Positions 3 to 61,830 of a stretch of 64,000 nucleotides of DNA are shown here, in pieces. Under the pieces are notes generated by a model. It was not told the DNA's origin, did no database searches, and was given only the letters and a program-made list of their open reading frames with translations. Both the position numbers and the translations under genes were made by a program. The stretch covers positions 62,001 to 126,000 of the IMG/VR virus record IMGVR_UViG_3300028829_003504. One strand, given 5' to 3'. Position 1 is the first letter of the stretch. Each line of letters begins with the position of its first letter.

Positions 3-617
3 GTTAGCCACAATAGTTACGACTTCTGTATCTTTGTTTATGCTGCCCCACATCCCGAGACCTGGCCACAATACAGCCTGGGTATTACGTTTAACAAAAA
101 CATTATCTTTCTTATATCTTAGGATTTCAGAAAATACTGTTCTTATGTCACAATTAGATACCATCTCGCCAATGTGTCCCGACACGTCTACTCTATAAAC
201 ATTACGCACAAGCTTCCCGAAACTTAGGACAAGTTTCGTTCCTTCCGTAACAGTAGTAACCGAGTGAGGAATTATATCAGGCCTAAAGGTAATAGAATCG
301 AAGCCTAATAGTTTTCGTCGCTTGATATATGCGGCCTTATTCTTCTTATGTCCCCATAGTTGAAGGACACCTCCACGTAAGGCATTACGTAAGGTGACGT
401 CCGTTCTAAGATAATCATATCCTGCCCACCAGTGAGAATTATCTACGTGTTGGCATATCTTAGTGCCTTCTTGATACTTAATTAATTTAAGGTCACGCCT
501 GATTAACTTGCTTAGCCATTGAGGTATGAGCCACATGACTAAGTATGGAGTTAAGAAGCTTGCGTTTTGCTTGTGTTCAATCCACTTTAAGAACTTTCTA
601 TTTTTCCAGAGGTACAT
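3..617 (-). CDS. 2OG-Fe(II) dioxygenase, prolyl-4-hydroxylase-like (partial; runs off left edge; absent from ORF track)
   Basis: Translated by hand from ATG at 617 (MYLWKNRKF...) and open to the window edge. Contains LIKYQEG..HVD (HxD), GGVLQL and FRPDIIPHSVTTVTEGTKLVLSF (distal His plus G-x-K), the canonical DSBH 2OG-oxygenase motif order. Confidence 0.75.
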   Translation of the reverse strand, partial: MYLWKNRKFLKWIEHKQNASFLTPYLVMWLIPQWLSKLIRRDLKLIKYQEGTKICQHVDNSHWWAGYDYLRTDVTLRNALRGGVLQLWGHKKNKAAYIKRRKLLGFDSITFRPDIIPHSVTTVTEGTKLVLSFGKLVRNVYRVDVSGHIGEMVSNCDIRTVFSEILRYKKDNVFVKRNTQAVLWPGLGMWGSINKDTEVVTIVAN

Positions 618-1422
618 TACCTTCATCCTTACTAATATTGAAGTTTACATTAACAGATTTAACAGTTGCATTAGGCATTATATGCAAATCAACTATCGTT
701 TTAGGTGTTTGTATAGTAGCAGTGAAGCTCGCGTTTGTTCGGGCGTTATCTGTCCACATCTCCTCGTCAATCTCATACAAGAAACGACTCTTACCTTCTT
801 CACCTGTAGGGTTATAGTCTACTACACTAGGCTCCAAGTTAATGAAGCTACGTGCCTGAAGCTTATATCCAAATAACAAGTGATACCATTTAACATCTTT
901 AATGGTACTGCCTAGTACTCTACAAAGATATCTATTCCACATACCGCGTGCAGCACTAACGCCTTTCATTGTAGTCCATGTTTCTTGGTGTGCTGCTACT
1001 TTACTGTCAGTTAAAGATTTACATTGCACCATGGACTTCATCTGTTCTTCGAGGCTAGCGGACATGTCCTCTATCATATCGTCGTTAGTTGGCTTGTTGA
1101 TGTAAGCCGCAGTGACTTCCTCTACACTCTTTTGTACCATAGAGTTAAGGCGTCTTATAGCAGCGGCCTCTAGGTCATTATGATCGTTCTCGACTGATGT
1201 GGGACCCCAAATAGAAGGTTCTTCTTCTAAATCAATTTCATCGAGATTCCCCACTTTAGGATCATGATCAGTGGTCCATACTTTCCAAGTATCTCCTTCG
1301 ACGTGTATATAATCTAAGACCTTTTTAGGGCAATGTACGAAGCGGCCTAAGCCTTCAATGGTTAACTCCCTGCTAGGCTGGCAACCAACGATATCGCAAG
1401 GACATTCCATATCCACACTCAT
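598..1422 (-). CDS. hypothetical protein resembling the C-terminal domain of contractile tail sheath proteins
   Basis: IRRLNSMVQKSVEEVTAAYINKPTNDDM and IVDLHIMPNATVKSVNVNFNISKDEG parallel the T4 gp18-type C-terminal motifs (VRRL...N...; YI.P......I.LNF). Confidence 0.45.
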   Translation of the reverse strand: MSVDMECPCDIVGCQPSRELTIEGLGRFVHCPKKVLDYIHVEGDTWKVWTTDHDPKVGNLDEIDLEEEPSIWGPTSVENDHNDLEAAAIRRLNSMVQKSVEEVTAAYINKPTNDDMIEDMSASLEEQMKSMVQCKSLTDSKVAAHQETWTTMKGVSAARGMWNRYLCRVLGSTIKDVKWYHLLFGYKLQARSFINLEPSVVDYNPTGEEGKSRFLYEIDEEMWTDNARTNASFTATIQTPKTIVDLHIMPNATVKSVNVNFNISKDEGNVPLEK

Positions 1423-18987: not shown

Positions 18988-21156
18988 ATGATTAATGAAA
19001 TTCGTTTAAGGACGTTTACTTCGCAGGTTGGAGAGGATAATGAAGTTCTCTCCAGAGACCCGAAGCAGAACGCTATAGAATACGAAGGAGATACAGGTCC
19101 CAATACTAGATTAGTTGAGGATGTCGCCTTCAATAAAAAACTAGGTGTACTAACATTCATTAGAAACAACGGTGAAGTCATTGAAGCAAGCGGGTTCTTA
19201 ACAGAGGATCAGATAGGGCACGGCCCTAAAGGTAAGGTAGGTAGAATAGGTAAAGCAGGTCGTGATGGTGAAGAAGGCCGACTAGGTAAAGAAGGACCTG
19301 CTGGATGTGAAGGTGCGCAAGGTAATGCGGGCGATAAAGGGATGTCAGGTAGAGATGGTGAGGATGGTCCTGTAGGTATAGCAGGTACTTCTGGATGTGA
19401 AGGAGATGTAGGCCCTGAGGGTGACGAAGGGGATAAAGGTCCTAAAGGATTCCAAGGATCGATGGGTAAAGACGGGTTAGACTGTATCATAGGCTGTCCT
19501 GGACCTAAAGGGGAACAAGGTTTAGGTACTTTTGTAGTACAAAAGGAAACACCTACTGAGGAGCACGTATACTTATGGGGCGTTCCTTTTGAGAGCGTTT
19601 TACCTGAGTTACCCAAAAAGCCTGATGATATGTCAGCTTCAATCAATTCTATAGTAGTTACTATGACTAAGGATAGAGGTACTACTTATACTGCTTCAGG
19701 CTCTTTAATAGTGAGCGACTTTAAAGGTGGTGTAGGACCTTTCTCTATCATTTGGACAGGTGACTATAAAGCTAAGTTAGGTATAACTAAGGATAGTATA
19801 AGTAACGACAGCCTAAGATTATCACTTGATGCCTCCGCTGAAATAGAACCAGGTGAGGTTGCTGAGATTGCTGGCGATGCCGTTGTTACCATAACGGATA
19901 CGTCAAATGGTAAACAGCTAGTTTTACCTACTACGTATGAATTTAAAGGGAGCAACAGTACGGTAGTTGCTCCTCCCATATACGGTAACGTACGTGATGC
20001 AGCCGTTGTTGAAGGTGATGACTTAAAGTTCTTAGTAACTACTACGAGTCCTTTACTCTCATCAGTACGAATCACATATACGCTAAAGTCAGGAACAGCA
20101 GGAACCTCCGACTACAAGGATTTGGGTCAAGGTTACATGGACTTAAGCATAGGCGTGGACCAGTTCTACGTTAATGTAGAAGCAATACGCGATTCTATAC
20201 CTAACGAAGATGTGGAAACAATGTCGGTTACTGTTAGTATTCCTGGCGTATCTGAATTAAATGCAGGTGATATGACAGCAATAGGTACTATTACTGAGGC
20301 TGATAGCCATATAGTACCTATTGTCCTAGGGCCTGCAGTGGTGACGGAGGGAAGTACTGCAAAAATAACCATCAGGCTAGGTGGTTCTTACATAGAAGGT
20401 GTCACCGGCGGCTACGCAGTTAAGTATAGAACATTATCGGATACAGCGGGTACGTCGGACTACGTAGCTCGGTCTGGGACTCTAACTTTCACCTATAGTT
20501 GGGAAGAGAAAGTCATTGAAATAGCAACAATAGATGATTCTATTGTTGAAGCCACTGAGCAGTTTTATTTTGAGTTGTACGATGCAGGTGCACATCTTGA
20601 CTTAGGTGGAGATACTAAAAAAGTTACGGTTACAGTTAATGACAATGACGAAACTTATAGGGGTTCTACCGGCGGTGGGTGTATAGGATGGGGTGCGAAA
20701 GTTGAAACGCCTGAAGGTACTACATCTATAGAGACTGTATTGATAGGTGATACTATCCTAGGATACGCTGAGCCTAGTATGTCAACAAGTGCTAATTCAA
20801 ACGATCCAGAAGTATTAAACTGGCACGCCCTTGAGTTAAGAGGCAAACGTGCTTGGGTTATGGTTACAAATGCTAGGCATGATACATACCCTCAATACAA
20901 AGTTATCAACGATCTTAACTTAACTTTCGATCATCCTGTCATGACTAAGCGTGATGGCGTATGGCAGTGGCTACCTGCCCTGCAAGTTATAGTTAGTGAT
21001 ATTGTCCTAGGCACTGATAGTCAAGAAGTCCCAGTTACAATAGCTACAGAAGTATACAAAGAACTTAAAGTAGTAGAGCTTGACGTTGAGCCTCACGATG
21101 TCTATTATGTTAACGACATACTAGTCCACAATGTGAATAAAATTGTACATAAGTAA
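18988..21156 (+). CDS. collagen-like fibre protein with two Calx-beta domains and a C-terminal Hint domain
   Basis: About 32 Gly-X-Y triplets; Calx-beta motifs (V.EG...Y.T.SGTAGTSDY; GTLTF...K.I.I.TIDD.IVE..E.F); GGG|C...TFDH...VHN. Confidence 0.85.
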   Translation: MINEIRLRTFTSQVGEDNEVLSRDPKQNAIEYEGDTGPNTRLVEDVAFNKKLGVLTFIRNNGEVIEASGFLTEDQIGHGPKGKVGRIGKAGRDGEEGRLGKEGPAGCEGAQGNAGDKGMSGRDGEDGPVGIAGTSGCEGDVGPEGDEGDKGPKGFQGSMGKDGLDCIIGCPGPKGEQGLGTFVVQKETPTEEHVYLWGVPFESVLPELPKKPDDMSASINSIVVTMTKDRGTTYTASGSLIVSDFKGGVGPFSIIWTGDYKAKLGITKDSISNDSLRLSLDASAEIEPGEVAEIAGDAVVTITDTSNGKQLVLPTTYEFKGSNSTVVAPPIYGNVRDAAVVEGDDLKFLVTTTSPLLSSVRITYTLKSGTAGTSDYKDLGQGYMDLSIGVDQFYVNVEAIRDSIPNEDVETMSVTVSIPGVSELNAGDMTAIGTITEADSHIVPIVLGPAVVTEGSTAKITIRLGGSYIEGVTGGYAVKYRTLSDTAGTSDYVARSGTLTFTYSWEEKVIEIATIDDSIVEATEQFYFELYDAGAHLDLGGDTKKVTVTVNDNDETYRGSTGGGCIGWGAKVETPEGTTSIETVLIGDTILGYAEPSMSTSANSNDPEVLNWHALELRGKRAWVMVTNARHDTYPQYKVINDLNLTFDHPVMTKRDGVWQWLPALQVIVSDIVLGTDSQEVPVTIATEVYKELKVVELDVEPHDVYYVNDILVHNVNKIVHK
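20680..21132 (+). other. Hint (intein-like / BIL-type) autoprocessing domain, about 151 aa
   Basis: Block A CIGWGAKVETPEG, block B LTFDHPV, blocks F/G VVELDVEPHDVYYVNDILVHN. The +1 residue is Val and there is no endonuclease insert. Confidence 0.85.
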
Positions 21157-21166
21157 GGAGAATTAA

Positions 21167-21799
21167 ATGTTAACTAGACCTCCTATGGAATCAGTTAATG
21201 CTAACGGTACTGCCAGTCAGACTGACGTTATAGTTAAAGACGGGAAGTTAGCTGCGGGTAACAAAGAAGATAGTCAAACCGCTGAGGTACAAGATATATT
21301 CTTCGATTCTACTGTCGGTATTCTCGTCATAGAGTTTACTAATGGTGAGACTAAGCGTGTATCTGGGTTCCCTACGTTCGGAACTATACCGGATGGTCCT
21401 GCAGGTCCTACAGGCGACCCTGGTGAAGACGGAAAAGAGGGACGTGACGGACGTGACGGTGAAACAGGAGCACCTGGATGCTTCGGGCCTATTGGACCTA
21501 AAGGAGTAGAGGGTGATCCCGGACGCAATGGCGAAGATGGAGCACCCGGAGCACCTGGACCTAAAGGCTGTCCTGGTCCAGCAGGTAATAAGGGACCTAA
21601 AGGGGAACCTGGAGATGTGGGGGAACCTGGAGTACAAGGACCTCCAGGTGATACAGGTCCTCAAGGCCCTGAGGGTGAGCGTGGTCCAGCAGGTAAAATC
21701 AACTATATCATAAGTACATCAGACCCAGGAACTAGCGCAGGTGCTGGCAGTATATGGATTAATCCTAACATTACAGAAACCAGCCCGGCTTGGCCGTAG
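21167..21799 (+). CDS. collagen-like fibre protein
   Basis: MLTRP N-terminus, about 33 uninterrupted Gly-X-Y triplets and a [13 protein letters not shown] cap. Confidence 0.85.
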
Positions 21800-21807
21800 G
21801 AGTTAGT

Positions 21808-22875
21808 ATGAGTGACGTTAAAACCAATATGCTAGATATCGGACATATTAGCGGTGACTTACGAGTCCAAGATGGAACGCTTAAAATTGTCCCTGATTCT
21901 ATGACGCCTAATGGCAATGTTACAGGATATATTGATAAAACAGGAGTCTTGACTATTGACATACCTGGCCACGGTACTATACAAGCAAACGGATTCCTAA
22001 CGCGTGCTGATATCGGTCAGGGGCATGAAGGCAATAGGGGAAATGAAGGCAGTAATGGAACTGACGGATCGATAGGATTAGATGGCTCCAAAGGTGTTAT
22101 AGGTGATAGGGGAGAAGTAGGTAGTAGAGGCGTACCTGGAGTAAGAGGACCCAGAGGCATGCAAGGCAGTTTTGGCCAAAATGGCAATAGTGGTGCGGAG
22201 GGAGTTAAAGGAGATGACGCCTTTGTTAATATGTTTATACAGGAGTCAGACCCAGGGGCTCCAGGCGCAGGCGCAGTATGGGTTAAACCTATATACACCC
22301 ACCTGCAAGAAGCCATTGCTGATATACAAGCCAATTGTAGTAGTGATGAAGATGAAGATACAGAGGAATTACCAGTCATTGAAGGTGATTCGGAATCACA
22401 TCCTTATACAAGTGATGGACATGCTACAGGTAGCTTAGTCGTTTACTTCGATACAAGTACGTACACCACTTTAGAAGACAGCGGTAAGGAATTCATACGT
22501 GTAGAAGAAGAAGAAAGATTCATACTAATACTTAGACTACTTTCGCCGTTACCTATTGATGCTGTATTCCAAGTGAAACTTAGAGAGGACCCTACTAATA
22601 TTGCATGGGCGGGATTCAAATGGGATTCAGATGACGCTAAGGGTACTGTAGAAAGAACACTTACAATACCAGCAGGTAAGTTAGTCTCTGATGAACTTAC
22701 CGCTTACGTTCCTGAGGATTGGGTAATCGCAAGCGATAGCGGTTATGGCGAACTTGCAATTTCGTCCGATTCAGGTAACAATCAAATAATGATTGACGAA
22801 AGTACGTACCAATTTGTCAGTGATTCCCCCAAATTGAACTATATTAAGATGCGAGTCTATCCTAAGATTTCGTAG
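21808..22875 (+). CDS. collagen-like fibre protein with C-terminal beta-rich domain
   Basis: GF.T...IG collagen lead-in, about 21 triplets and DPGAPGAGAVWVKP. Start placed at the ATG after a GGAG RBS (the track starts at 21790). Confidence 0.8.
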   Translation: MSDVKTNMLDIGHISGDLRVQDGTLKIVPDSMTPNGNVTGYIDKTGVLTIDIPGHGTIQANGFLTRADIGQGHEGNRGNEGSNGTDGSIGLDGSKGVIGDRGEVGSRGVPGVRGPRGMQGSFGQNGNSGAEGVKGDDAFVNMFIQESDPGAPGAGAVWVKPIYTHLQEAIADIQANCSSDEDEDTEELPVIEGDSESHPYTSDGHATGSLVVYFDTSTYTTLEDSGKEFIRVEEEERFILILRLLSPLPIDAVFQVKLREDPTNIAWAGFKWDSDDAKGTVERTLTIPAGKLVSDELTAYVPEDWVIASDSGYGELAISSDSGNNQIMIDESTYQFVSDSPKLNYIKMRVYPKIS

Positions 22876-22902
22876 TATTACATAATTTTCTAAACACGTG
22901 AG

Positions 22903-23400
22903 GTGCTTATGTTAACAAGACCACCACTAAATGCAATTGATGCTGGAGCCGAAAGCGGTGACGTAACTTCAAATGCACTTAATCTACAAGTAGAATCTAT
23001 TGACGATAGTATAGCGACTGAGCTTGGTGCTAAATACGATTCAGTCAATGGCTCTCTAGTTATATCATTCCCAGGATACCCACACCTTAGGATAAACGGC
23101 TTCATGACGCCTATTCATATTAAAGAAGGCAGACAAGGTAAACCTGGGTATGAAGGCAGAGAAGGAATCGAAGGCACTATAGGATCTGACGGAGAGCAAG
23201 GCCAGCAAGGATGTTTAGGCCCAGAGGGTCCTCAGGGACGTCCAGGTCAACGTGGACCTAGAGGTCAGATGGGTTCTCAAGGTGAGATTGGTCCTACGGG
23301 TCCTGATGGGGCTAAAGGAGAGCCTGGAGAATTTCTAGTCTATATACAGAACGACGAACCCGTAGGGGTGGAGCACGGTGCGCTGTGGGTGAAACAATAA
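22903..23400 (+). CDS. collagen-like fibre protein
   Basis: MLTRPP N-terminus, about 22 Gly-X-Y triplets and a GALWVK cap. Confidence 0.85.
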   Translation: MLMLTRPPLNAIDAGAESGDVTSNALNLQVESIDDSIATELGAKYDSVNGSLVISFPGYPHLRINGFMTPIHIKEGRQGKPGYEGREGIEGTIGSDGEQGQQGCLGPEGPQGRPGQRGPRGQMGSQGEIGPTGPDGAKGEPGEFLVYIQNDEPVGVEHGALWVKQ

Positions 23401-28587: not shown

Positions 28588-30975
28588 ATGGCTACTACCA
28601 ACTTTGCACCTCTGCTTACAGTGGGTGATGAATACGACTTGTCACCTTTTAGTGGCAGAAACATGGTAATACATGCCCAACGCAATAACACAGGATATAC
28701 GTATACATTCAGCATTGACATACTGACTGGTTTTGATCAAGATCGTTACTACGGTCTTATTGTACCTTCGGGACATGGAGAGATACCTCAATCCAATCCT
28801 AATCAGTTGTTTAAAATCACAGCCGATGCTAAGCTTGTACCTCTTAACTATAGTGATGGTCTTGCAGCACAGATTAGCTACCTTACAGGTGATGATGCAG
28901 GAACTCCAGATATCAATGTACATTGGGGATCAGTAGCCCAGCTTACGGTTATCTCAAGTACTGCAAATGAGGGAACTGAGGCGCTACTTAGAATATACAG
29001 GGATGGTGATACTTCGGGTGCGGTTGATATTAATATTGGTTTTATTCCGGGGACCGCGGACTTAGATGATGTACAGTCTATACCTCCATCTGTTACTATG
29101 CAGTCGGGCTTCTCGTTTGTGGATGTACCTATTACTATTAAGACTGACCTTGATTACGAAGGGGACCAGTCATTTTTATTAAGTGCCCAAATAGCAAATG
29201 CGCCTAATGGGGAGGAATGGACAGGTAGTAACTACAGGCAGTTGGTTATTGTAGATACAACTCCTGAATTTCCTGTAGATGTACCCGGTTGTATGGACGT
29301 TACCGCTAACAACTATAACGATGAGGCTACGATCGACAATGGCAGTTGTACCTATGACCCTGTAGTTGTACCAGGCTGTACTGACCCTCTAGCCAACAAC
29401 TATGATCCACTGGCTACTTCGAACAACGGCAGCTGTACATACGACCCAGTGGTGGTATACGGATGTACTGACCCTTCGGCAAGCAACTATAACCCACTAG
29501 CTACAGATAATGACAATTCCTGTGTCTATCCGCCTCCTGTAGTGGACTGTCTAGTCGTAGGAGACTTACTGGAAGTAGAACATTGGTTTAAAGTTTGGTT
29601 TATAGAGCCTGTTGACGGAGAACAGCTACACGACCAAGATTTAATTCAGTATAAGTGGAGCGGTGACTGGGTAACTGACCCTCGTATAGACCTATTCGAT
29701 TACTCGGAGAAAAATCGTGTAGCGATGTTCAAATTCACCAACACTATGTCTTCATCTGATAGTGACGTAGATGTAGACTACGAGGTAACAGCTTGGGCTA
29801 AAGATTTAAGGTTCATTACGTTAGATGTTACTGACGAAGATAGTGCCAATGTAAGCTTCTCTATGCCTTGTGTTATTGCAGGTAATACCCCAAGCTTTAG
29901 CGTAGGCGACATTACAGTTACGGAACCTAGTAGCGGTACCCTAAAAGCATCTGTTTATATAACGGCAAGCGAAGCCGTAACGGGTGGATCTATTACAATC
30001 GATTACTGTTCGAGTGATATAACCGCTACGTCATCTAGTGCCTCTGTAGATGGAGACAGAGATTACGAGCCTGCCTGCGGTACGGTTACTTTTGAAGTAG
30101 GTGAAAGCTCTAAACAAATAGATGTAACTATAAATACTGATAATCTGTACGAACCTTCCGAGACATTAAAGATGACCATATCTAATGTCAGTCGGGGCAG
30201 TATATCAGACTCGGTAGGTACTATAGAGATACAAGAATGGATTGTTCCTACAGTATCAGTTACTCTGGCGTCACAGGGAGCTACGAAAGAATTGTTTGTG
30301 GGTCGCGATACTTCCGGATCGACGGATGCGGTTGAGGTGACAGTAAACGGAAATGTCGAATCAAGACGTTTCTTGATGGAACAGGTCCTCAAGGACTATG
30401 ACATAGCTATATGTGATGAACCCGTTGAGACTGGTCACGGTAATGACGGATGTTCAGACAATTCTAATCCCCTGTCCCACTATAAAGGTGTTGCGGGTGC
30501 TACTAGTAATTTGACTGTCAACTATATAAATAGCATACAACCTCTTCTTGATTCAGGTACTCAGGAGATTAGTATCCTAGTAATGAATGATAGCTCCGAT
30601 GCAATATCCCATGATAACTCTGTATGGGATAACGAGTGGGCTTGGCTAGGAGCTTTAGGTATCCCTGTTACTCTGACCTTCATACGCGTAATAGGGCAGA
30701 CTCATATAGATAACGGTACAGGTAACTATGAATTGGCTCGCATCTGGTTTGAAGAAATCGTTGCTGCTGCACCAGGTAATGTAACGGCTTACTTTAAATC
30801 CTATAGCTCCTACACAACAGGCGCAGCCAGTGACCTAAATGATATACTAAGCAGTACAGTCAATAATGACTATGCGGCAACATGTAACGCCCGACCCGAT
30901 GACGTTATAATAGTAACAGCACCGGACGAAGACTCAGCCTTATCCTTAGCACAGGGAGCCATAACATGTCCTTAG
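28588..30975 (+). CDS. adhesin-like fibre protein: Calx-beta, 3x Cys repeat, Calx-beta, vWA-like domain
   Basis: Two Calx-beta motifs, GC(T/M)D..A.NY...AT..N.SC.Y repeats and the MIDAS-like DTSGS at 30307. Confidence 0.75.
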   Translation: MATTNFAPLLTVGDEYDLSPFSGRNMVIHAQRNNTGYTYTFSIDILTGFDQDRYYGLIVPSGHGEIPQSNPNQLFKITADAKLVPLNYSDGLAAQISYLTGDDAGTPDINVHWGSVAQLTVISSTANEGTEALLRIYRDGDTSGAVDINIGFIPGTADLDDVQSIPPSVTMQSGFSFVDVPITIKTDLDYEGDQSFLLSAQIANAPNGEEWTGSNYRQLVIVDTTPEFPVDVPGCMDVTANNYNDEATIDNGSCTYDPVVVPGCTDPLANNYDPLATSNNGSCTYDPVVVYGCTDPSASNYNPLATDNDNSCVYPPPVVDCLVVGDLLEVEHWFKVWFIEPVDGEQLHDQDLIQYKWSGDWVTDPRIDLFDYSEKNRVAMFKFTNTMSSSDSDVDVDYEVTAWAKDLRFITLDVTDEDSANVSFSMPCVIAGNTPSFSVGDITVTEPSSGTLKASVYITASEAVTGGSITIDYCSSDITATSSSASVDGDRDYEPACGTVTFEVGESSKQIDVTINTDNLYEPSETLKMTISNVSRGSISDSVGTIEIQEWIVPTVSVTLASQGATKELFVGRDTSGSTDAVEVTVNGNVESRRFLMEQVLKDYDIAICDEPVETGHGNDGCSDNSNPLSHYKGVAGATSNLTVNYINSIQPLLDSGTQEISILVMNDSSDAISHDNSVWDNEWAWLGALGIPVTLTFIRVIGQTHIDNGTGNYELARIWFEEIVAAAPGNVTAYFKSYSSYTTGAASDLNDILSSTVNNDYAATCNARPDDVIIVTAPDEDSALSLAQGAITCP
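29287..29529 (+). repeat. three tandem 29-aa (87-nt period) GCTD..A.NY...AT..N.SC.Y repeats
   Basis: Units start at 29287, 29374 and 29461, each with two Cys. Confidence 0.9.
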
Positions 30976-31846: not shown

Positions 31847-32608
31847 ATGTTAACTAAACCGAAGATTAGTATGATAGCTCCAAGTCAGAACTCTGCTGAT
31901 AATGATGTAGTGAAGACGGCTGGAGGTAAGTTAAAGTCGGAGCAGAATGTAGTACCTATAGGGGACGCCGCAGTTAAGAGTGGCCGATATGATACTACGA
32001 CAGGCACTTTGATGATAACGTTAGGTGATGACAGTACTTTAGTCGTGGAGGGTTTTCCTACTGACCAGAGTATAGGAACTGGCCCTAAAGGTGATAGAGG
32101 TGCTGTAGGAAAAGGAGGCCGTCCTGGCAAGAACGGCAAAGATGGATTAGATGGCCCTCAAGGATGTCCAGGGTCTAAAGGAGATAAAGGTGAAATCGGT
32201 CCTACAGGGCCAGAAGGCCCTATGGGTATAACGGGTGAGCAAGGTATTCAAGGTATTCAGGGCCAGCAAGGTGACAGGGGACCTAAAGGAGAACCTGGGC
32301 AAGAACCTATTTACGTATACAGTGAAGCAGGTAGTGAAGAACGAACAGTACAATATGGCCGTGTCATGCTGTGGGGTCACTATCAGTCGGACGGTAGCGT
32401 TAACACTGCTGATGTTAGGTATCCTCAGGCTACAACTAGACTTACACAAACTGTAGTAGCCTTCTTCGCTAATCCTCAATCCGTTCAAGCTCAAAACTAT
32501 GAGATTGAAGCGCAGACGAAAGAAGGGTTTGCTCTACGCGTACCATCATCATTTGCCTTACCCCTTGATGACGATTGGGACTTCCAATGGATAGCACTAG
32601 GAGATTAA
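31847..32608 (+). CDS. collagen-like tail fibre with C-terminal lectin-like tip domain
   Basis: MLTKP N-terminus, about 24 triplets, and GRVMLWGH...V.YP.A...GF.....F.WIALG typical of fibre tips. Confidence 0.8.
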   Translation: MLTKPKISMIAPSQNSADNDVVKTAGGKLKSEQNVVPIGDAAVKSGRYDTTTGTLMITLGDDSTLVVEGFPTDQSIGTGPKGDRGAVGKGGRPGKNGKDGLDGPQGCPGSKGDKGEIGPTGPEGPMGITGEQGIQGIQGQQGDRGPKGEPGQEPIYVYSEAGSEERTVQYGRVMLWGHYQSDGSVNTADVRYPQATTRLTQTVVAFFANPQSVQAQNYEIEAQTKEGFALRVPSSFALPLDDDWDFQWIALGD

Positions 32609-58269: not shown

Positions 58270-61200
58270 CTACCTTTGTTTATTACCAAGGGACTTACTA
58301 GTACCTATTAAGCTCCTAGTATTATTCATCTTACCTGTAGATCCCTTAGACCCGTAAGAGGCTACTCCTAGTGCGGCTTTACTCTTACTACTTACTACTG
58401 AACCTTTTAAAATATCTATAAAATCTGGGTTAGTTAATCCCCACATACACAACACAGATGCTCTCCATATATCATCAGTAAGGTCATCCCCTTTAATGAC
58501 GGTCTTACCTGCATCCTGTACAGTCAACATTTGTAAGATAAAATGCTCTACTGGCATCCTTTCAAAACACATAGGGTATTCATCATGAGTACTTAAGGCT
58601 AAGATATCATCAAACTCTTGCTTAACGTGAGGTCTAGGTATAAGTATTTGTTGTTGTTGCATCCTGGTTTTAAAATCAACGAAGTCACTATACTTAAGGC
58701 TATACTGTTTCCACAAGTCAATATCCGTACTAATTTCAGCATCTTGCAGTAGCTTTATACTGTTCCATCTATCGGCTAATAGTATCTTTACATTTCGAGC
58801 CTCTATAAGAGGTATCATAATGTTTTCATATATCTTAGGATAATGTAGAGGTATGCTAGGTAATGGATTTATTTCAACGACAATATCAAGTACAGGTATT
58901 ACAACTTCTTCACCATTAACCTCTACTTTCTGCAAGCTGCCTATACTCAAGGCAAAACAGTTATTACTGTAGCCGGCATCGACTGCCATAACGGACTTGC
59001 CTTCGCAGGACTTAACTTTATCTACATAGCCCCATCGATACTTAGCTCCGTCTTTTGCTTTGTATATCTTGTAAGTGACGTTTGCAAAATTACGACCAGT
59101 CTTCTTTATAATACCTTTAACCAGTTCTTCCGACGTAATGAATGGGTTACTAGATAGTGGGGGTTGAGCTCCATAATCCCGCATCGCGGTACCGTGATCT
59201 TTTCGGAATTCATCGTCTAAATCGGCGCGCGTTACGTCGGGGTTCATTTCCCAAGTAGGCTTATGTAGACCTAGTAGTTTTTTACTGCCGTGTGACTGCC
59301 TGATTAATTCACATATCTTATCACGTTGCGAACTAGGTGAACTGATATTCATAAAGTAACCTGTTAAGGCTTCATCGTATTCGGAGGCTAACTGCCTGCG
59401 CTCACTGTTACGTACGGTACGTAACGAACGCTCAAGTGCAATGTAAACTTCCGAGCCGTTAATCTTAACCTTGCTGCTGTTCTTGTCATTGTCGAACCAG
59501 CCGATTTCATCAACCGAATTTGACACAAGCATGCCGCTTGCTTGGTATGCGTGTTCCGGAATGTTGACAGTCATATCATAGGTCTTAACCTTGATCTTAC
59601 TAGGTTTAACATATTCTATTTCTGAGGTAAATAAATCAAACTCCTTAGTAGGTTCGTAGTAGTCCTCATACATACTTTGCCCATCGGTGTCATAAGCAGT
59701 ACTATTGCGCCTAAAATCAAAACCTATGTGACTAACAAATATACGACTGAACTCTCGGCTCATATCAAGTCTATATAGAAAAACTTTCCTGTCACCGTAT
59801 TTATAATCAACCTTATGCCAATCACCCTTACTTCCGTATTTAGTTTTCTTAAAACTAGATGCTATCCTAAGTCTAAGCAAAAGTTGTTGGATCTGCTTTA
59901 TAAGCTCTTTACTTGTTGATCGGTAGTAAACAGTTTTTCGGCTAAGGAAGCCTCCATCACAATCGAACGCAGATCTAATGTAGGACATCGCACAGGATTC
60001 AGGTGCCTGTAAAATACTCCAAGGTACCTGCTTATATGCACTGTAGTCCGAAGTGCATCCTATTTTCTGTAAGAACTCTATAATAGGTCTGTGACTTATG
60101 GAGGCTCGATATACTTTCTTACCAAGACGTTTAGTTTGCAAATGTCTTGGAGCGATACCAAATGTCCGCACCACTTTATCACAGTAATCATTATACTTAT
60201 CTAAGTTAGTTGTATCGAATCTATATCCACGTTGACCTTTATCTTGCACATTACCGTCAGCAGTTAGATAACCTAAGATGCTTGCTAGGTCATCTGTCAT
60301 ACACTCAGGCAAAACAACATTTAGCCCATCGTGGGAACTATCAAGTATTAAGTCTGAAAGATTAAACTTGTCCGTGATATTGTAGTAACAACGTTCCATG
60401 CCCGTGTACATGACGCCTTTACGGTAGTGCCGTTCGATCATACCGCTACGTCTAAGTTGAGTCATTACCTTAGTAAGGGCTTTCGACCCGTTAGAGGCTT
60501 CTTTAATTTCTTTACGCGTAAAGTTTACAAGCTTAGCCATAGCAGCATAAACTATCTGCTTGCTAGATGATTGGGTTGGTTGCACCACAGTAAATTTCAA
60601 TTCGCGGCTAAACTCAGCACCTGTCGATATAACTACTCTATCAGTCTCTAGTAGATTCTTTAACTTAACTTTCTTGAACTTATTGTTACGGTAAACACAA
60701 ATCTTATGTTCAGGTGTAGCCTTTAACTCCTGTCCAGATTTAAGTTTGAGTCCCCATATTTCTTTTGTTCCCGTGCAGACATGTTTAGTTATCTCGCCGT
60801 AACTAGCTCCTACGTTTGTCCAACACCAACCTTCTTTAATCTTATCCATTCTAATAAGACCTTCACTAGTGCTTATCAGTTGATCTCCAGGTATACAACC
60901 AAATATACGTGTTCTACCACGAAGCGTTCGTTTATCAGGTCCTGCAGGATATACCATAAGACTACGGTGTCTGTAAAGTACGAATGTATCTTTTAACTTA
61001 AATATTTCATGGCCATACTTCTGCTCATAACGTCTAAGCAGTGCATGATATTTTTGAAACCAAGGGCTTTCACACAGGTACTGATAATATGGTTCCCATA
61101 AAGTATCTTTAGCCTGAGCATAGGTTAGAGCTACGAAAGTTCCGTGGAATACGGTGTTTGATTTAACCCTAAATAGCTGGGTGGGTTTTTGAGCTTTGAG

Positions 61201-61830
61201 TATACGGTGGGTAAGATAAGTACTTAACATTGCGACGAGGGCGGACTTACCAGAACGCTGTCCTGCGTTAACTGCGAGTTCATTGTAGAAGTTTAGTTCT
61301 TCGTCACGCATCATGTGAGAACGTCTAGCCTGGCACTTAGGACAAACACCATACTCTAACAGTACTACTCTGCGTTCGAATTCTACTAATCCGTCTTGAG
61401 GGTCGTGACCCCCATCATCCATCCACTCAAGGTCAGAACATCGGGCGCAATACTCTGAGAAAAGCTTAACGCCAATGAGTGCTTGCTCTAGGTACGGAGG
61501 CATATCTGAACCGAGGAATTCCTCGTTCGTGCACCAATCGTAATAGTTCTTTGCTTGGGACATGGAGCTATCGTCGATTTTTAAATCTCTAGGAACTATG
61601 TCCTTAGAATCGACTACTTCTGATATAACAGCGAAGAGGTCTCTCTCCTCGTTTGCATATTGCTTAGCAAGATCACTAGGTTCCCCTATCATAGCCATGT
61701 CTGTATTATTCGCTGAGACCTCTAAATCAGTCTCCTCGTCAGTCAGGCCTATAAGATCAGAAATCCCTGAAACTAGTCCAGGGTTTTTGTTTCTGACTGC
61801 AACAGGGGATGATCTCTTCTTACGAGCCAT
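58270..61830 (-). CDS. terL: terminase large subunit containing an intein
   Basis: Walker A AGQRSGKS, ALTYAQA, spliced Walker B RTRIFG|SVDEIGW, coupling ISSP and RNase H-like AVDAG...DDI nuclease motifs; N-terminal CxxC pairs. Confidence 0.9.
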   Translation of the reverse strand: MARKKRSSPVAVRNKNPGLVSGISDLIGLTDEETDLEVSANNTDMAMIGEPSDLAKQYANEERDLFAVISEVVDSKDIVPRDLKIDDSSMSQAKNYYDWCTNEEFLGSDMPPYLEQALIGVKLFSEYCARCSDLEWMDDGGHDPQDGLVEFERRVVLLEYGVCPKCQARRSHMMRDEELNFYNELAVNAGQRSGKSALVAMLSTYLTHRILKAQKPTQLFRVKSNTVFHGTFVALTYAQAKDTLWEPYYQYLCESPWFQKYHALLRRYEQKYGHEIFKLKDTFVLYRHRSLMVYPAGPDKRTLRGRTRIFGCIPGDQLISTSEGLIRMDKIKEGWCWTNVGASYGEITKHVCTGTKEIWGLKLKSGQELKATPEHKICVYRNNKFKKVKLKNLLETDRVVISTGAEFSRELKFTVVQPTQSSSKQIVYAAMAKLVNFTRKEIKEASNGSKALTKVMTQLRRSGMIERHYRKGVMYTGMERCYYNITDKFNLSDLILDSSHDGLNVVLPECMTDDLASILGYLTADGNVQDKGQRGYRFDTTNLDKYNDYCDKVVRTFGIAPRHLQTKRLGKKVYRASISHRPIIEFLQKIGCTSDYSAYKQVPWSILQAPESCAMSYIRSAFDCDGGFLSRKTVYYRSTSKELIKQIQQLLLRLRIASSFKKTKYGSKGDWHKVDYKYGDRKVFLYRLDMSREFSRIFVSHIGFDFRRNSTAYDTDGQSMYEDYYEPTKEFDLFTSEIEYVKPSKIKVKTYDMTVNIPEHAYQASGMLVSNSVDEIGWFDNDKNSSKVKINGSEVYIALERSLRTVRNSERRQLASEYDEALTGYFMNISSPSSQRDKICELIRQSHGSKKLLGLHKPTWEMNPDVTRADLDDEFRKDHGTAMRDYGAQPPLSSNPFITSEELVKGIIKKTGRNFANVTYKIYKAKDGAKYRWGYVDKVKSCEGKSVMAVDAGYSNNCFALSIGSLQKVEVNGEEVVIPVLDIVVEINPLPSIPLHYPKIYENIMIPLIEARNVKILLADRWNSIKLLQDAEISTDIDLWKQYSLKYSDFVDFKTRMQQQQILIPRPHVKQEFDDILALSTHDEYPMCFERMPVEHFILQMLTVQDAGKTVIKGDDLTDDIWRASVLCMWGLTNPDFIDILKGSVVSSKSKAALGVASYGSKGSTGKMNNTRSLIGTSKSLGNKQR
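59518..60897 (-). mobile_element. intein (460 aa) with LAGLIDADG homing endonuclease
   Basis: Starts CIPGDQLISTSEG; block B ATPEHK; LAGLIDADG-like LGYLTADG and SAFDCDG; ends TYDMTV...HAYQASGMLVSN, with +1 Ser. Confidence 0.92.

What the first reader, a model, noticed from the sequence alone, without database searches (positions are those of the whole stretch)
3..617. Unlisted prolyl-4-hydroxylase-like 2OG oxygenase in a collagen-rich phage
Seen: a minus-strand ORF missed by the track, with HVD...GG.L...H.V..V..GTK. Established: collagen-type P4Hs (animal, Chlorella virus, Bacillus anthracis) bind 2-oxoglutarate with a Lys in H-x7-G-x-K, whereas many other 2OG oxygenases use Arg. The phage's collagens contain many Y-position prolines (GDP, GAP, GEP, GCP, GKP, GRP). 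Inference: the phage may hydroxylate its own fibre collagens. Phage 2OG oxygenases have many other substrates, and this gene lies outside the structural operon.
Basis: partly seen in the sequence, partly recalled or inferred. Interest (0 to 1): 0.6.

Follow-up and report, generated by a model that had tools for sequence, protein, structure and literature searches.

The report
Small accessory phage 2OG oxygenase
The gene is real and encodes a small iron/2-oxoglutarate oxygenase of the broad prolyl-hydroxylase-like superfamily in a jumbo phage, but comparison across phages gives no support for the idea that it hydroxylates the phage's collagen-like fibres.

Summary
The minus-strand ORF exists and its motifs are as described. 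The window cuts it: the full gene is 233-236 aa and its stop lies 85 nt left of the window. Residues ~24-141 form a minimal double-stranded beta-helix with H60-x-D62, H121 and K131. Residues ~143-236 are a helical extension of unknown fold. It belongs to a small phage family (33 representatives among 1.84 billion proteins; phrog_13746, unknown function) that weakly matches Pfam PF13640.

The collagen idea fails four tests:
- The Lys is not a family trait. Position 131 is Arg in 25 of 35 members, including the four closest relatives.
- Of 14 near-complete phage genomes carrying the family, 7 have no collagen gene.
- In this phage's own clade (Lu11/PaBG/NCTB/Erwinia-Dickeya jumbo phages), 24 of 24 contigs carry the orthologous collagen fibre genes, but only this phage has the oxygenase. 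Four cultured relatives match none of four 2OG-oxygenase Pfam families tested.
- Y-position proline is no more frequent here (0.12) than in those relatives (0.06-0.14).

The gene sits in a variable accessory block. Relatives elsewhere lie beside nucleotide-metabolism, NAD-salvage and RtcB genes. It is most likely an accessory dioxygenase with a non-collagen substrate, which remains unknown. This is an ordinary finding of modest interest.

The parts
3..617 (-). The part of the oxygenase gene that lies in the window. The likely start is the ATG at 617 (an alternative ATG is at 626). The ORF continues 85 nt beyond the left edge of the window to its stop at G000:C1:8315-8317. The full product is 233 aa (P0003) or 236 aa (P0002).
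   Evidence: 54% identical relative P0004
204..557 (-). Minimal double-stranded beta-helix (cupin-type) 2OG/Fe(II) oxygenase domain, residues ~24-141 of P0002. Eight strands between residues 44 and 141.
   Evidence: phrog_13746 E 2.2e-15 over residues 24-141; PF13640 E 0.0068 over residues 47-135; AlphaFold2 model with pLDDT mostly above 85 over this part; Foldseek and VIA matches
441..449 (-). Codons for His60-Val61-Asp62, the HxD part of the predicted metal-binding triad, at the end of strand 57-60.
   Evidence: sequence; H in 32/35 and D in 33/35 members
264..266 (-). Codon for His121, the distal His of the predicted triad. It is preceded by the family's F-R-P-D motif (residues 114-117).
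   Evidence: sequence; H in 33/35 members
234..236 (-). Codon for Lys131, the predicted 2-oxoglutarate C5-carboxylate ligand at the start of the last barrel strand. It is Arg in most relatives.
   Evidence: sequence; R 25, K 5, V/L 5 of 35
3..200 (-). The in-window part of the C-terminal extension (residues 143-236; helices 158-175, 200-214, 220-230). Only 10 of the 35 aligned sequences carry an extension (9 of them 86-101 residues). Fold and role are unknown.
   Evidence: conserved in P0004; no stand-alone homologue next to short-form genes; no usable look-alike
598..1422 (-). Upstream co-directional ORF (274 aa, no family match). It overlaps the oxygenase start by 20-29 nt, so the two are read as one operon.
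   Evidence: absent from four relatives and only a weak match in NCTB
18988..23400 (+). CONTEXT ONLY (tested, not linked): four adjacent collagen-repeat fibre genes (722, 210, 355 and 163 aa) in the plus-strand structural block.
   Evidence: orthologues with the same triplet counts occur in relatives without the oxygenase
31847..32608 (+). CONTEXT ONLY: fifth collagen-repeat gene (253 aa).

Best explanation
The gene encodes a small accessory Fe(II)/2-oxoglutarate dioxygenase of the prolyl-hydroxylase-like (PF13640/P4Hc) superfamily. It is carried by a ~262-kb jumbo phage of the Lu11/PaBG/NCTB/Erwinia-Dickeya ('Lupandier') group.

Shown:
- An eight-stranded double-stranded beta-helix of only ~115 residues.
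- It presents His60, Asp62 and His121 in the positions of the iron-binding triad, and Lys131 in the position of the 2-oxoglutarate C5-carboxylate ligand.
- A lineage-specific helical C-terminal extension follows the barrel.

Inferred mechanism:
- The enzyme binds Fe(II) and 2-oxoglutarate.
- It decarboxylates 2-oxoglutarate to succinate and uses the resulting ferryl species to hydroxylate its substrate.

Inferred role:
- It is made from a variable, non-structural gene block together with nucleotide-metabolism and other auxiliary genes.
- It acts during infection on a target other than the phage's collagen-like fibres.
- My best guess is a side chain of a host or phage protein, as in the bacterial EF-Tu prolyl hydroxylase PPHD and the ribosomal-protein hydroxylases. 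This guess rests on the 2OG-oxygenase structural matches being mostly protein hydroxylases.
- The actual substrate is unknown.
For: Enzyme class:
- Motifs in the sequence.
- Conservation of H60, D62, R74, GG85-86, FRPD114-117, H121, G129 and S135 across 35 relatives.
- PF13640 matched by 24 of 35 members, best E 5e-7.
- AlphaFold2 model with mean pLDDT 82.8; the triad residues sit at the canonical strand ends.
- Foldseek against solved structures puts P4Hs, PPHD, PiuC, PolD and PHD2 on top.
- BFVD top hits are the RP12 and Phabio homologues, labelled 2OG-Fe(II) oxygenase, with target TM-scores 0.85 and 0.66.
- No AlkB or TET/JBP structure appears among the top matches.

Accessory and non-structural:
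- The gene lies in a minus-strand block that diverges from the baseplate/fibre block.
- dCMP deaminase, a UvrD helicase and a ThyA-like gene lie downstream.
- In Phabio the homologue lies among PRPP synthetase, NAPRTase and ThyA. In Vp_R1 it lies among ThyX, DNA ligase and RNR.
- Across 22 lineages, RtcB lies within 1.8 kb on the same strand in 4, and NAPRTase within 4.4 kb in 4. dCMP deaminase (within 2.2 kb) and ThyA (3.4-8.8 kb away) are each nearby in 3. No frequently shared neighbour family that I annotated was structural.
- The flanking ORFs are themselves missing from most relatives.

Not collagen-linked:
- 7 of 14 near-complete family-carrying genomes have no collagen gene.
- 24 of 24 clade contigs have collagen genes, but only 1 of 24 has the oxygenase.
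- The profile search passed its positive control, 5 of 5.
- Alexandra, AD1, JA11 and fHe-Yen9-02 match none of PF13640, PF13661, PF03171 or PF13759.
- The Y-position Pro fraction is 0.12 here and 0.06-0.14 in relatives.
Against: - Activity was not measured.
- This protein itself scores below the Pfam cut-off (17.8 against 27 bits).
- It has no sequence match to any solved structure, even as a profile.
- The family's N-terminal W..GRQ motif reads W..HKQ here.
- A ~115-residue core is much smaller than characterised 2OG protein hydroxylases. It lacks their substrate-binding loops and N-terminal helices.
- The 'protein substrate' step is only a majority vote of weak structural neighbours. The nucleotide-metabolism and RtcB neighbourhoods would fit a nucleic-acid or metabolite substrate equally well.
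Confidence: 0.55

Rival explanations
1. One reading: the enzyme is a phage collagen prolyl 4-hydroxylase. It would convert Y-position prolines of the phage's own collagen-like fibre proteins to 4-hydroxyproline and so stabilise their triple helices.
For: - The superfamily is the right one.
- Lys131 has the spacing seen in collagen-type P4Hs (that they use Lys is from my own knowledge).
- The phage has five collagen ORFs with 16 Y-position prolines.
- Lu11, Phabio and RP12, which carry short-form homologues, also have collagen ORFs.
- 7 of 14 near-complete family-carrying genomes have collagen genes. I did not measure the base rate in unrelated large phages, so a mild enrichment is not excluded.
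Against: - Lys is a minority state in the family (5 of 35), and the four nearest relatives have Arg.
- Half of the near-complete family-carrying genomes have no collagen gene.
- All 24 clade contigs have the orthologous collagen genes, with identical triplet counts in the four relatives examined, but only this phage has the oxygenase.
- Four cultured, infective relatives match none of four Pfam 2OG-oxygenase families tested.
- Y-position Pro is not enriched here.
- The gene is ~18 kb from the first collagen gene, on the other strand, in an accessory block.
- Prokaryotic and phage collagen-like proteins generally fold without hydroxyproline (PMC8968730).
Confidence: 0.05
2. The substrate is a nucleic acid or nucleotide. 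The enzyme would oxidise a base or sugar in DNA, RNA/tRNA or a free nucleotide, for repair, modification or evasion of host defence, together with the neighbouring nucleotide-metabolism or RNA-repair genes.
For: - In this phage the neighbours are dCMP deaminase, a UvrD helicase, and a ThyA-like gene next to a PP-binding (carrier-protein) gene.
- In Vp_R1 they are ThyX, DNA ligase and RNR.
- RtcB RNA ligase lies within 1.8 kb on the same strand in 4 of 22 lineages.
Against: - No match to AlkB (PF13532) or TET/JBP families in Pfam, in a scan that lists matches up to E 10, though its filters drop most above about 0.1. None among the top structural hits either.
- The neighbourhood is not conserved. 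No neighbour family is shared by more than 4 of 22 lineages.
- Early/auxiliary blocks of large phages commonly mix unrelated functions (my own knowledge).
Confidence: 0.17
3. The substrate is a small metabolite. The enzyme would be a PiuC/YbiX- or PolD-like oxygenase that alters host metabolism during infection, for example iron, amino-acid or NAD-related metabolism.
For: - PiuC, the Shewanella PiuC-like protein 3dkq and PolD are among the best Foldseek and VIA hits.
- There is a weak NCBIfam hit to the PiuC-type model NF003974 (E 0.009).
- NAPRTase lies within 4.4 kb in 4 of 22 lineages, and PRPP synthetase is a neighbour in Phabio and Vp_R1.
- A small barrel without peptide-binding loops suits a small substrate.
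Against: - All these matches are weak and tied with protein hydroxylases.
- No biosynthetic partner is conserved next to the gene.
Confidence: 0.17
4. The protein is not an enzyme. It would be a cupin-fold binding or regulatory protein that merely keeps oxygenase-like residues.
For: - Three family members (P0008, P0010, P0027) have an incomplete or lost metal triad, and five lack the basic residue.
Against: - This protein keeps all of H60, D62, H121 and K131.
- The triad is kept in at least 32 of 35 members, together with the PF13640-type R74 and GG85-86 motifs. That indicates selection for catalysis.
Confidence: 0.05

Closest known systems
phrog_13746 and its cultured-phage members: Ralstonia phage RP12 ORF126 (BAW19100.1; UniProt A0A1L7N0V4, auto-named '2OG-Fe(II) oxygenase'), Pseudomonas phage Phabio PHABIO_345, Lu11_0349, Vibrio phage Vp_R1 VPR_024
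   Same: Same family. phrog_13746 matches at E 2.2e-15. tblastn gives 31-40% identity over the barrel. The A1 profile matches these genes at E 1e-38 to 1e-47. The RP12 model superposes with target TM-score 0.85. All keep HxD...H and the FRPD and G-x-R/K-x-x-L-S motifs, and all sit in non-structural regions.
   Different: Those proteins are 116-148 aa, the barrel only, and have Arg at position 131. The window's protein is 233-236 aa, has a ~95-residue helical C-terminal extension and has Lys131. Only 10 of the 35 aligned sequences carry such an extension. None has a tested function.
Collagen-type prolyl 4-hydroxylases: PBCV-1 vCPH (5c5t), Bacillus anthracis P4H (3itq), Chlamydomonas P4H (3gze, 2jij), human C-P4H-II (7zsc)
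   Different: No detectable sequence similarity. The core is about half the size and lacks their N-terminal helices and substrate loops. The Lys is not conserved in the family. There is no phyletic link to collagen genes.
Bacterial and animal protein prolyl hydroxylases of the PHD type: Pseudomonas PPHD acting on EF-Tu (4j25, 4iw3), PHD2/EGLN1, Trichoplax and Dictyostelium PHDs
   Different: These enzymes are ~200 aa or more, with a substrate-clamping loop. There is no sequence-level match, and no target is known for the phage protein.
PiuC/YbiX (PKHD-type) Fe(II)/2OG oxygenases (9qn4, 3dkq) and PolD (9blq)
   Same: Among the best structural hits, with a weak NCBIfam hit to NF003974.
   Different: The score is far below the family cut-off (15.5 against 143 bits). 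These proteins are ~200-230 aa, and the physiological substrate of PiuC-type proteins is itself unclear (my own knowledge).
2OG-Fe(II) oxygenases of cyanophages and giant viruses (phrog_61; BFVD entries from S-CAM7, S-RIM50, Catovirus and others)
   Same: Viral accessory genes of the same superfamily. They are structurally similar at E 1e-5 to 1e-4. phrog_61 gives a weak hit (E 0.016).
   Different: They are a different, larger subfamily (150-660 aa). Their functions are also mostly untested.

Membership tests
2OG/Fe(II) oxygenase superfamily, PF13640 (P4Hc-like) branch | HxD/E...H metal-binding triad on the double-stranded beta-helix | tested here: met
   H60-V-D62 and H121 are in the sequence. 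They are conserved in 32-33 of 35 relatives. In the model they lie at the end of strand 57-60 and the start of strand 121-123.
2OG/Fe(II) oxygenase superfamily, PF13640 (P4Hc-like) branch | Basic residue (Arg or Lys) about 10 residues after the distal His, on the last barrel strand, to bind the 2-oxoglutarate C5 carboxylate | tested here: met
   K131 is at His121+10, at the start of strand 131-141. The position is R or K in 30 of 35 relatives.
2OG/Fe(II) oxygenase superfamily, PF13640 (P4Hc-like) branch | Score above Pfam's gathering threshold for PF13640 | tested here: not met
   17.8 bits against a 27-bit cut-off, E 0.0068. 24 of 35 relatives match at E <= 0.1, best 5e-7. Membership is therefore at the level of a distant branch, not a scored member.
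2OG/Fe(II) oxygenase superfamily, PF13640 (P4Hc-like) branch | Double-stranded beta-helix fold closest to solved 2OG oxygenases | tested here: inconclusive
2OG/Fe(II) oxygenase superfamily, PF13640 (P4Hc-like) branch | Fe(II)- and 2-oxoglutarate-dependent turnover | not testable with these tools
   Needs purified protein.
Collagen-type prolyl 4-hydroxylase (C-P4H, vCPH, BaP4H, plant/algal P4H) | Lys rather than Arg as the 2-oxoglutarate C5 ligand | tested here: met
   K131 is present. However it is Arg in 25 of 35 relatives, including the four closest. The Lys is a conservative variant, not an inherited P4H trait. That collagen P4Hs use Lys is from my own knowledge.
Collagen-type prolyl 4-hydroxylase (C-P4H, vCPH, BaP4H, plant/algal P4H) | Recognisable sequence similarity to characterised P4H catalytic domains | tested here: not met
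   No solved chain matched at E <= 10, with either the single sequence or the family profile.
Collagen-type prolyl 4-hydroxylase (C-P4H, vCPH, BaP4H, plant/algal P4H) | Full catalytic domain (~200 aa) with N-terminal helices and peptide-binding loops around the barrel | tested here: not met
Collagen-type prolyl 4-hydroxylase (C-P4H, vCPH, BaP4H, plant/algal P4H) | Occurs together with its collagen substrate across genomes | tested here: not met
   Collagen genes are absent from 7 of 14 near-complete genomes that carry the family. The family is absent from 23 of 24 clade contigs, all of which carry collagen genes. The positive control passed 5 of 5.
Collagen-type prolyl 4-hydroxylase (C-P4H, vCPH, BaP4H, plant/algal P4H) | 4-hydroxyproline formed in Gly-X-Pro repeats | not testable with these tools
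   Needs mass spectrometry or an enzyme assay.
phrog_13746 (phage protein family, function unknown) | Significant match to the family profile over most of its length | tested here: met
   E 2.2e-15, 58 bits; protein residues 24-141 against profile positions 17-120 of 125.

The most novel reading that the evidence does not exclude
The ~95-150-residue phage proteins of this family, and this long form, may be the smallest working 2OG/Fe(II) dioxygenases known. If so, they would be a host-takeover tool of large phages that hydroxylates a component of the host translation or RNA-repair apparatus. Candidate targets would be EF-Tu, a ribosomal protein or a tRNA. The hint is the recurrent position next to RtcB and nucleotide/NAD-salvage genes. 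A less likely but still open variant is that, in the subset of phages that also have collagen fibres, the enzyme moonlights as a fibre prolyl hydroxylase.
Probability: 0.12. Interest if true: 0.6.

Novelty: new member of a known kind. Interest (0 to 1): 0.22.

Why it matters
A phage-encoded collagen prolyl hydroxylase would have been a first for bacteriophages. It would also have been a useful tool for making hydroxylated recombinant collagens in bacteria. The evidence here says this gene is not that. The collagen fibres of this jumbo-phage clade are universal and evidently work without any such enzyme. The oxygenase is a sporadic accessory gene that is also found in phages without collagen.

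What remains is a small, poorly known family of unusually short 2OG-oxygenase-like proteins in large phages, with unknown substrate. It deserves a biochemical look but is not a surprise. Accessory 2OG oxygenases are common in large phages (my own knowledge). UniProt already auto-names the RP12 homologue '2OG-Fe(II) oxygenase' and labels the Phabio homologue a Fe2OG dioxygenase domain protein.

Tried and rejected
Searches that found nothing:
- Megablast of the region against 50,697 phage records found no match.
- The word-index protein search with residues 1-145 found only the protein itself and one relative. I therefore ran the exhaustive search.
- Sequence searches of the PDB with the protein and with the family profile found nothing at E <= 10.
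- No Pfam or PHROG family matched the seven ORFs nearest the gene. Only the dCMP deaminase matched.
- Literature searches found no study of this family or of hydroxyproline in phage fibres.

Scans of IMG/VR:
- A scan with the five long forms found only this phage.
- A scan with eight short forms found 35 loci.
- A scan with the single portal protein found only this phage. A four-sequence portal alignment was needed to reach the clade.

Ideas rejected:
- I tested whether the C-terminal extension is a separate neighbouring gene in short-form phages, which would give a functional link through gene fusion. It is not.
- The language-model and structure look-alike search of the extension gave nothing usable.
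- NCTB's two other PF13640-like ORFs are not hidden orthologues of this gene. They do not match the family profile.

Steps not taken:
- The 311-kb ENA contig of the closest relative (L002) and two IMG/VR contigs (L022, L023) are not held, so they could not be searched for collagen.
- I did not measure the base rate of collagen genes in unrelated large phages. Whether 7 of 14 is an enrichment is unknown.
- I did not run a direct DNA-pattern check for G-X-Y runs in the collagen-negative genomes. The pattern would have been long repeated typed text.
- No complex prediction was run, because I do not claim a binding pair.
- No reads tools were used.
- No alternative genetic code was used.
Full report
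**1. What is at the coordinates**

- The frame at window 3..626 on the minus strand is open and runs off the left edge of the window.
- The window is bases 8400-72399 of an 82,973-base record.
- In that record the ORF is L001:8315-9025(-), 236 aa (P0002).
- Public gene callers start it at the second ATG, window 617, giving 233 aa (P0003). That codon has AAGGA about 8 nt upstream.
- The gene overlaps the end of the upstream 274-aa ORF. A small 82-aa membrane-type ORF follows 9 nt after its stop.
  - His60-Val-Asp62 (window 449-441);
  - Gly85-Gly86;
  - His121 (266-264);
  - Gly129-Thr-Lys131 (Lys at 236-234).

**2. What phage it is**

- The identical protein lies on a 261,788-bp IMG/VR contig with direct terminal repeats, estimated 100% complete. 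The record held here is therefore only part of a jumbo-phage genome.
- A 54%-identical relative lies on a 311-kb ENA contig with the same gene order.
- The portal protein is 59% identical to that of phage NCTB. It is 51-55% identical to those of Erwinia phage Alexandra, Dickeya phages AD1 and JA11, and Yersinia phage fHe-Yen9-02.
- These belong to the 'Lupandier group' of PaBG, Lu11, NCTB and the Dickeya/Erwinia jumbo phages (PMC7412058).
- The record has three gene blocks:
  - a minus-strand block of mostly unknown and nucleotide-metabolism genes, which contains the target;
  - a diverging plus-strand structural block with PAAR, baseplate wedge, a 1562-aa tail protein and the collagen genes;
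  - a second minus-strand block with portal and terminase.

**3. The protein and its family**

- Pfam gives only a sub-threshold match to PF13640 (2OG-FeII_Oxy_3): E 0.0068, 17.8 bits against a 27-bit cut-off.
- PHROGs places residues 24-141 in phrog_13746, function unknown, at E 2.2e-15.
- NCBIfam gives a faint hit to the PiuC-type model.
- The PDB holds no sequence relative, for the protein or for its family profile.
- tblastn against phage records finds 14 records from 10 phages, all annotated as hypothetical proteins: Lu11, RVTF4, RP12, RP31, Viktualia, Phabio, HRDY3, D6, Vp_R1 and SJSY21.
- The exhaustive search of 1.84 billion representatives finds only 33 proteins at E <= 1e-3. Eight are 216-235 aa and one is 178 aa. 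The other 24 are 94-157 aa.
- The alignment shows the layout typical of PF13640:
  - H-x-D, then R74-x-N, then G85-G86-x-F;
  - then F-R-P-D-x3-H121;
  - then G129-x-[RK]131-x-x-L-S135.
- 24 of the 35 aligned sequences match PF13640, best E 5e-7.

**4. Predicted structure**

- The AlphaFold2 model built on this alignment has mean pLDDT 82.8.
- It shows eight strands between residues 44 and 141.
  - The HxD sits at the end of strand 57-60.
  - His121 opens strand 121-123.
  - Lys131 opens strand 131-141.
  - This is the canonical double-stranded beta-helix arrangement.
- Three helices follow (158-175, 200-214, 220-230), after a poorly predicted loop.

**5. Fold comparison**

- Foldseek against the PDB puts P4H-superfamily enzymes on top, but only at E ~3e-4. 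AspH and plain cupins are mixed in. The top enzymes are:
  - the Phytophthora and Chlamydomonas P4Hs;
  - Pseudomonas PPHD, PiuC and PolD;
  - PHD2, human C-P4H-II and the B. anthracis P4H.
- Against viral models, the RP12 and Phabio homologues stand out (E 5e-11 and 5e-10). UniProt labels them '2OG-Fe(II) oxygenase' and 'Fe2OG dioxygenase domain-containing protein'. Cyanophage and giant-virus 2OG oxygenases follow.
- No AlkB or TET/JBP protein appears near the top.
- The fold and motifs therefore say 2OG oxygenase of the P4H-like superfamily. They cannot say which substrate.

**6. The Lys argument**

- Position 131 is Arg in 25 of 35 members, Lys in 5 and Val/Leu in 5.
- The four closest relatives (37-54% identical) all have Arg.
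- Three of the other four Lys members have an incomplete or lost metal triad.
- An ordinary PF13640 ORF in phage NCTB has the same H-x7-G-x-R spacing.
- The Lys is a conservative variant within an Arg family. It is not a mark of collagen-P4H ancestry.

**7. Co-occurrence with collagen, tested both ways**

First direction: is collagen present where the family is present?
- Lu11, Phabio and RP12 have collagen ORFs, and Vp_R1 has only a sub-threshold hit.
- Across 34 IMG/VR contigs carrying the family, 11 have a collagen match. Among the 14 that are at least 90% complete, 7 have none.

Second direction: is the family present where collagen is present?
- All five closest cultured relatives carry 5-6 collagen matches. 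None matches the family profile.
- The same profile search finds the known positives at E 1e-38 or better, 5 of 5.
- Across 24 clade contigs retrieved through the portal protein, 24 have collagen genes (20 of 20 that are at least 90% complete). Only this phage has the oxygenase.
- Alexandra, AD1, JA11 and fHe-Yen9-02 also match none of PF13640, PF13661, PF03171 or PF13759.
- NCTB has two other, unrelated PF13640-like ORFs.

Orthology and proline content:
- The collagen genes are orthologous. Their uninterrupted runs have exactly 23, 34, 29 and 24-25 triplets in this phage and in the four relatives examined (NCTB, Alexandra, JA11, fHe-Yen9-02).
- The Y-position Pro fraction is 0.12 here, against 0.06, 0.12, 0.11 and 0.14 in those relatives.
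- Infective phages with the same fibres and the same proline content therefore do without any such enzyme.
- This agrees with the general finding that prokaryotic collagen-like proteins fold without hydroxyproline (PMC8968730).

**8. Genomic context**

- In this phage the gene lies ~18 kb from the first collagen gene, on the opposite strand.
- Downstream lie the small membrane ORF, two further unknown ORFs, dCMP deaminase, a UvrD helicase and, further on, an acetyltransferase, a carrier-protein gene and a ThyA-like gene.
- The long-form relatives on short contigs show the same local order.
- In Phabio the homologue lies among PRPP synthetase, NAPRTase and ThyA.
- In Vp_R1 it lies among ThyX, DNA ligase, RNR and PRPP synthetase.
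- I clustered all ORFs of 42 loci (22 lineages at 70% identity).
  - No neighbour is widely conserved.
  - RtcB lies within 1.8 kb on the same strand in 4 lineages.
  - NAPRTase lies within 4.4 kb in 4, and dCMP deaminase within 2.2 kb in 3.
  - ThyA lies 3.4-8.8 kb away in 3.
  - No frequently shared neighbour family that I annotated was structural.
- The ORFs flanking the gene in this phage are themselves absent from Alexandra, AD1, JA11 and fHe-Yen9-02.
- The gene therefore sits in a variable accessory region.

**9. The C-terminal extension**

- It is conserved among the long forms.
- It has no family match, no stand-alone counterpart beside short-form genes and no usable look-alike.
- Its role is unknown. 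Substrate recognition or oligomerisation would be the obvious guesses.

**10. Conclusion**

- The protein is best read as an accessory Fe(II)/2-oxoglutarate dioxygenase from a distant, unusually small branch of the P4H-like superfamily.
- The specific proposal that it hydroxylates the phage's collagen fibres is not supported. I put it at about 5%.
- The substrate is unknown. I favour a non-collagen protein target (about 40% within the enzyme reading) over nucleic-acid or metabolite targets (about 17% each). These odds rest on weak structural neighbours and on context.
- All translations used genetic code 11.

Noticed in passing
window 58270-61830 (-): The 1186-aa terminase large subunit is interrupted in frame by an intein with a LAGLIDADG homing endonuclease. 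Pfam LAGLIDADG_3 matches residues 614-703 at E 1.6e-16. Intein_splicing matches residues 345-771 at 35.5 bits, just under its 35.8-bit cut-off. The terminase PHROG matches in three separate stretches.
   Followed up: partly
window 18988-23400 and 31847-32608 (+); L053-L056: The uninterrupted Gly-X-Y runs of the fibre proteins have exactly conserved lengths (23, 34, 29 and 24-25 triplets) in this phage, NCTB, Alexandra, JA11 and fHe-Yen9-02. The portal proteins are only 51-59% identical. This suggests the triple-helix length is under strong constraint, like a ruler.
   Followed up: partly
window 18988-23400 and 31847-32608 (+): Four of the five collagen runs contain one or two Cys at the X position (GCE, GCF, GCP, GCL). 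These are possible inter-chain disulfide sites.
   Followed up: no
window 18988-21156 (+) and 28588-30975 (+): The 722-aa collagen protein and a 795-aa neighbouring ORF each carry a Calx-beta domain (E ~1.5e-13).
   Followed up: no
L003 19250-20702 (same phage contig, outside the window): A 79-aa PP-binding (acyl-carrier-like) gene sits directly before a 668-aa ThyA-like gene. The same pair occurs in the 311-kb relative (L002). This may be a DNA base-modification module.
   Followed up: no
L057 2166-2786 and L058 1687-2313 (phage NCTB): The closest cultured relative, NCTB, carries two other PF13640-like oxygenase ORFs (206 and 208 aa). They do not belong to the family studied here. 2OG oxygenases therefore come and go as accessory genes in this clade.
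   Followed up: partly
L020, L030-L032, L040 (IMG/VR contigs): In several large-phage lineages the short-form oxygenase gene is directly adjacent to an RtcB RNA-ligase gene. RtcB follows within ~30 nt in L020 and L030-L032, and sits immediately upstream in L040. RtcB lies within 1.8 kb on the same strand in 4 of 22 lineages.
   Followed up: partly
L001 8058-8306 (-), just left of the window: A small 77-82-aa ORF with an N-terminal hydrophobic segment follows the long-form oxygenase gene in this phage and in three metagenomic loci (two relatives). The gap is 9 nt in this phage, and the genes abut or overlap in the relatives. The arrangement suggests translational coupling.
   Followed up: no
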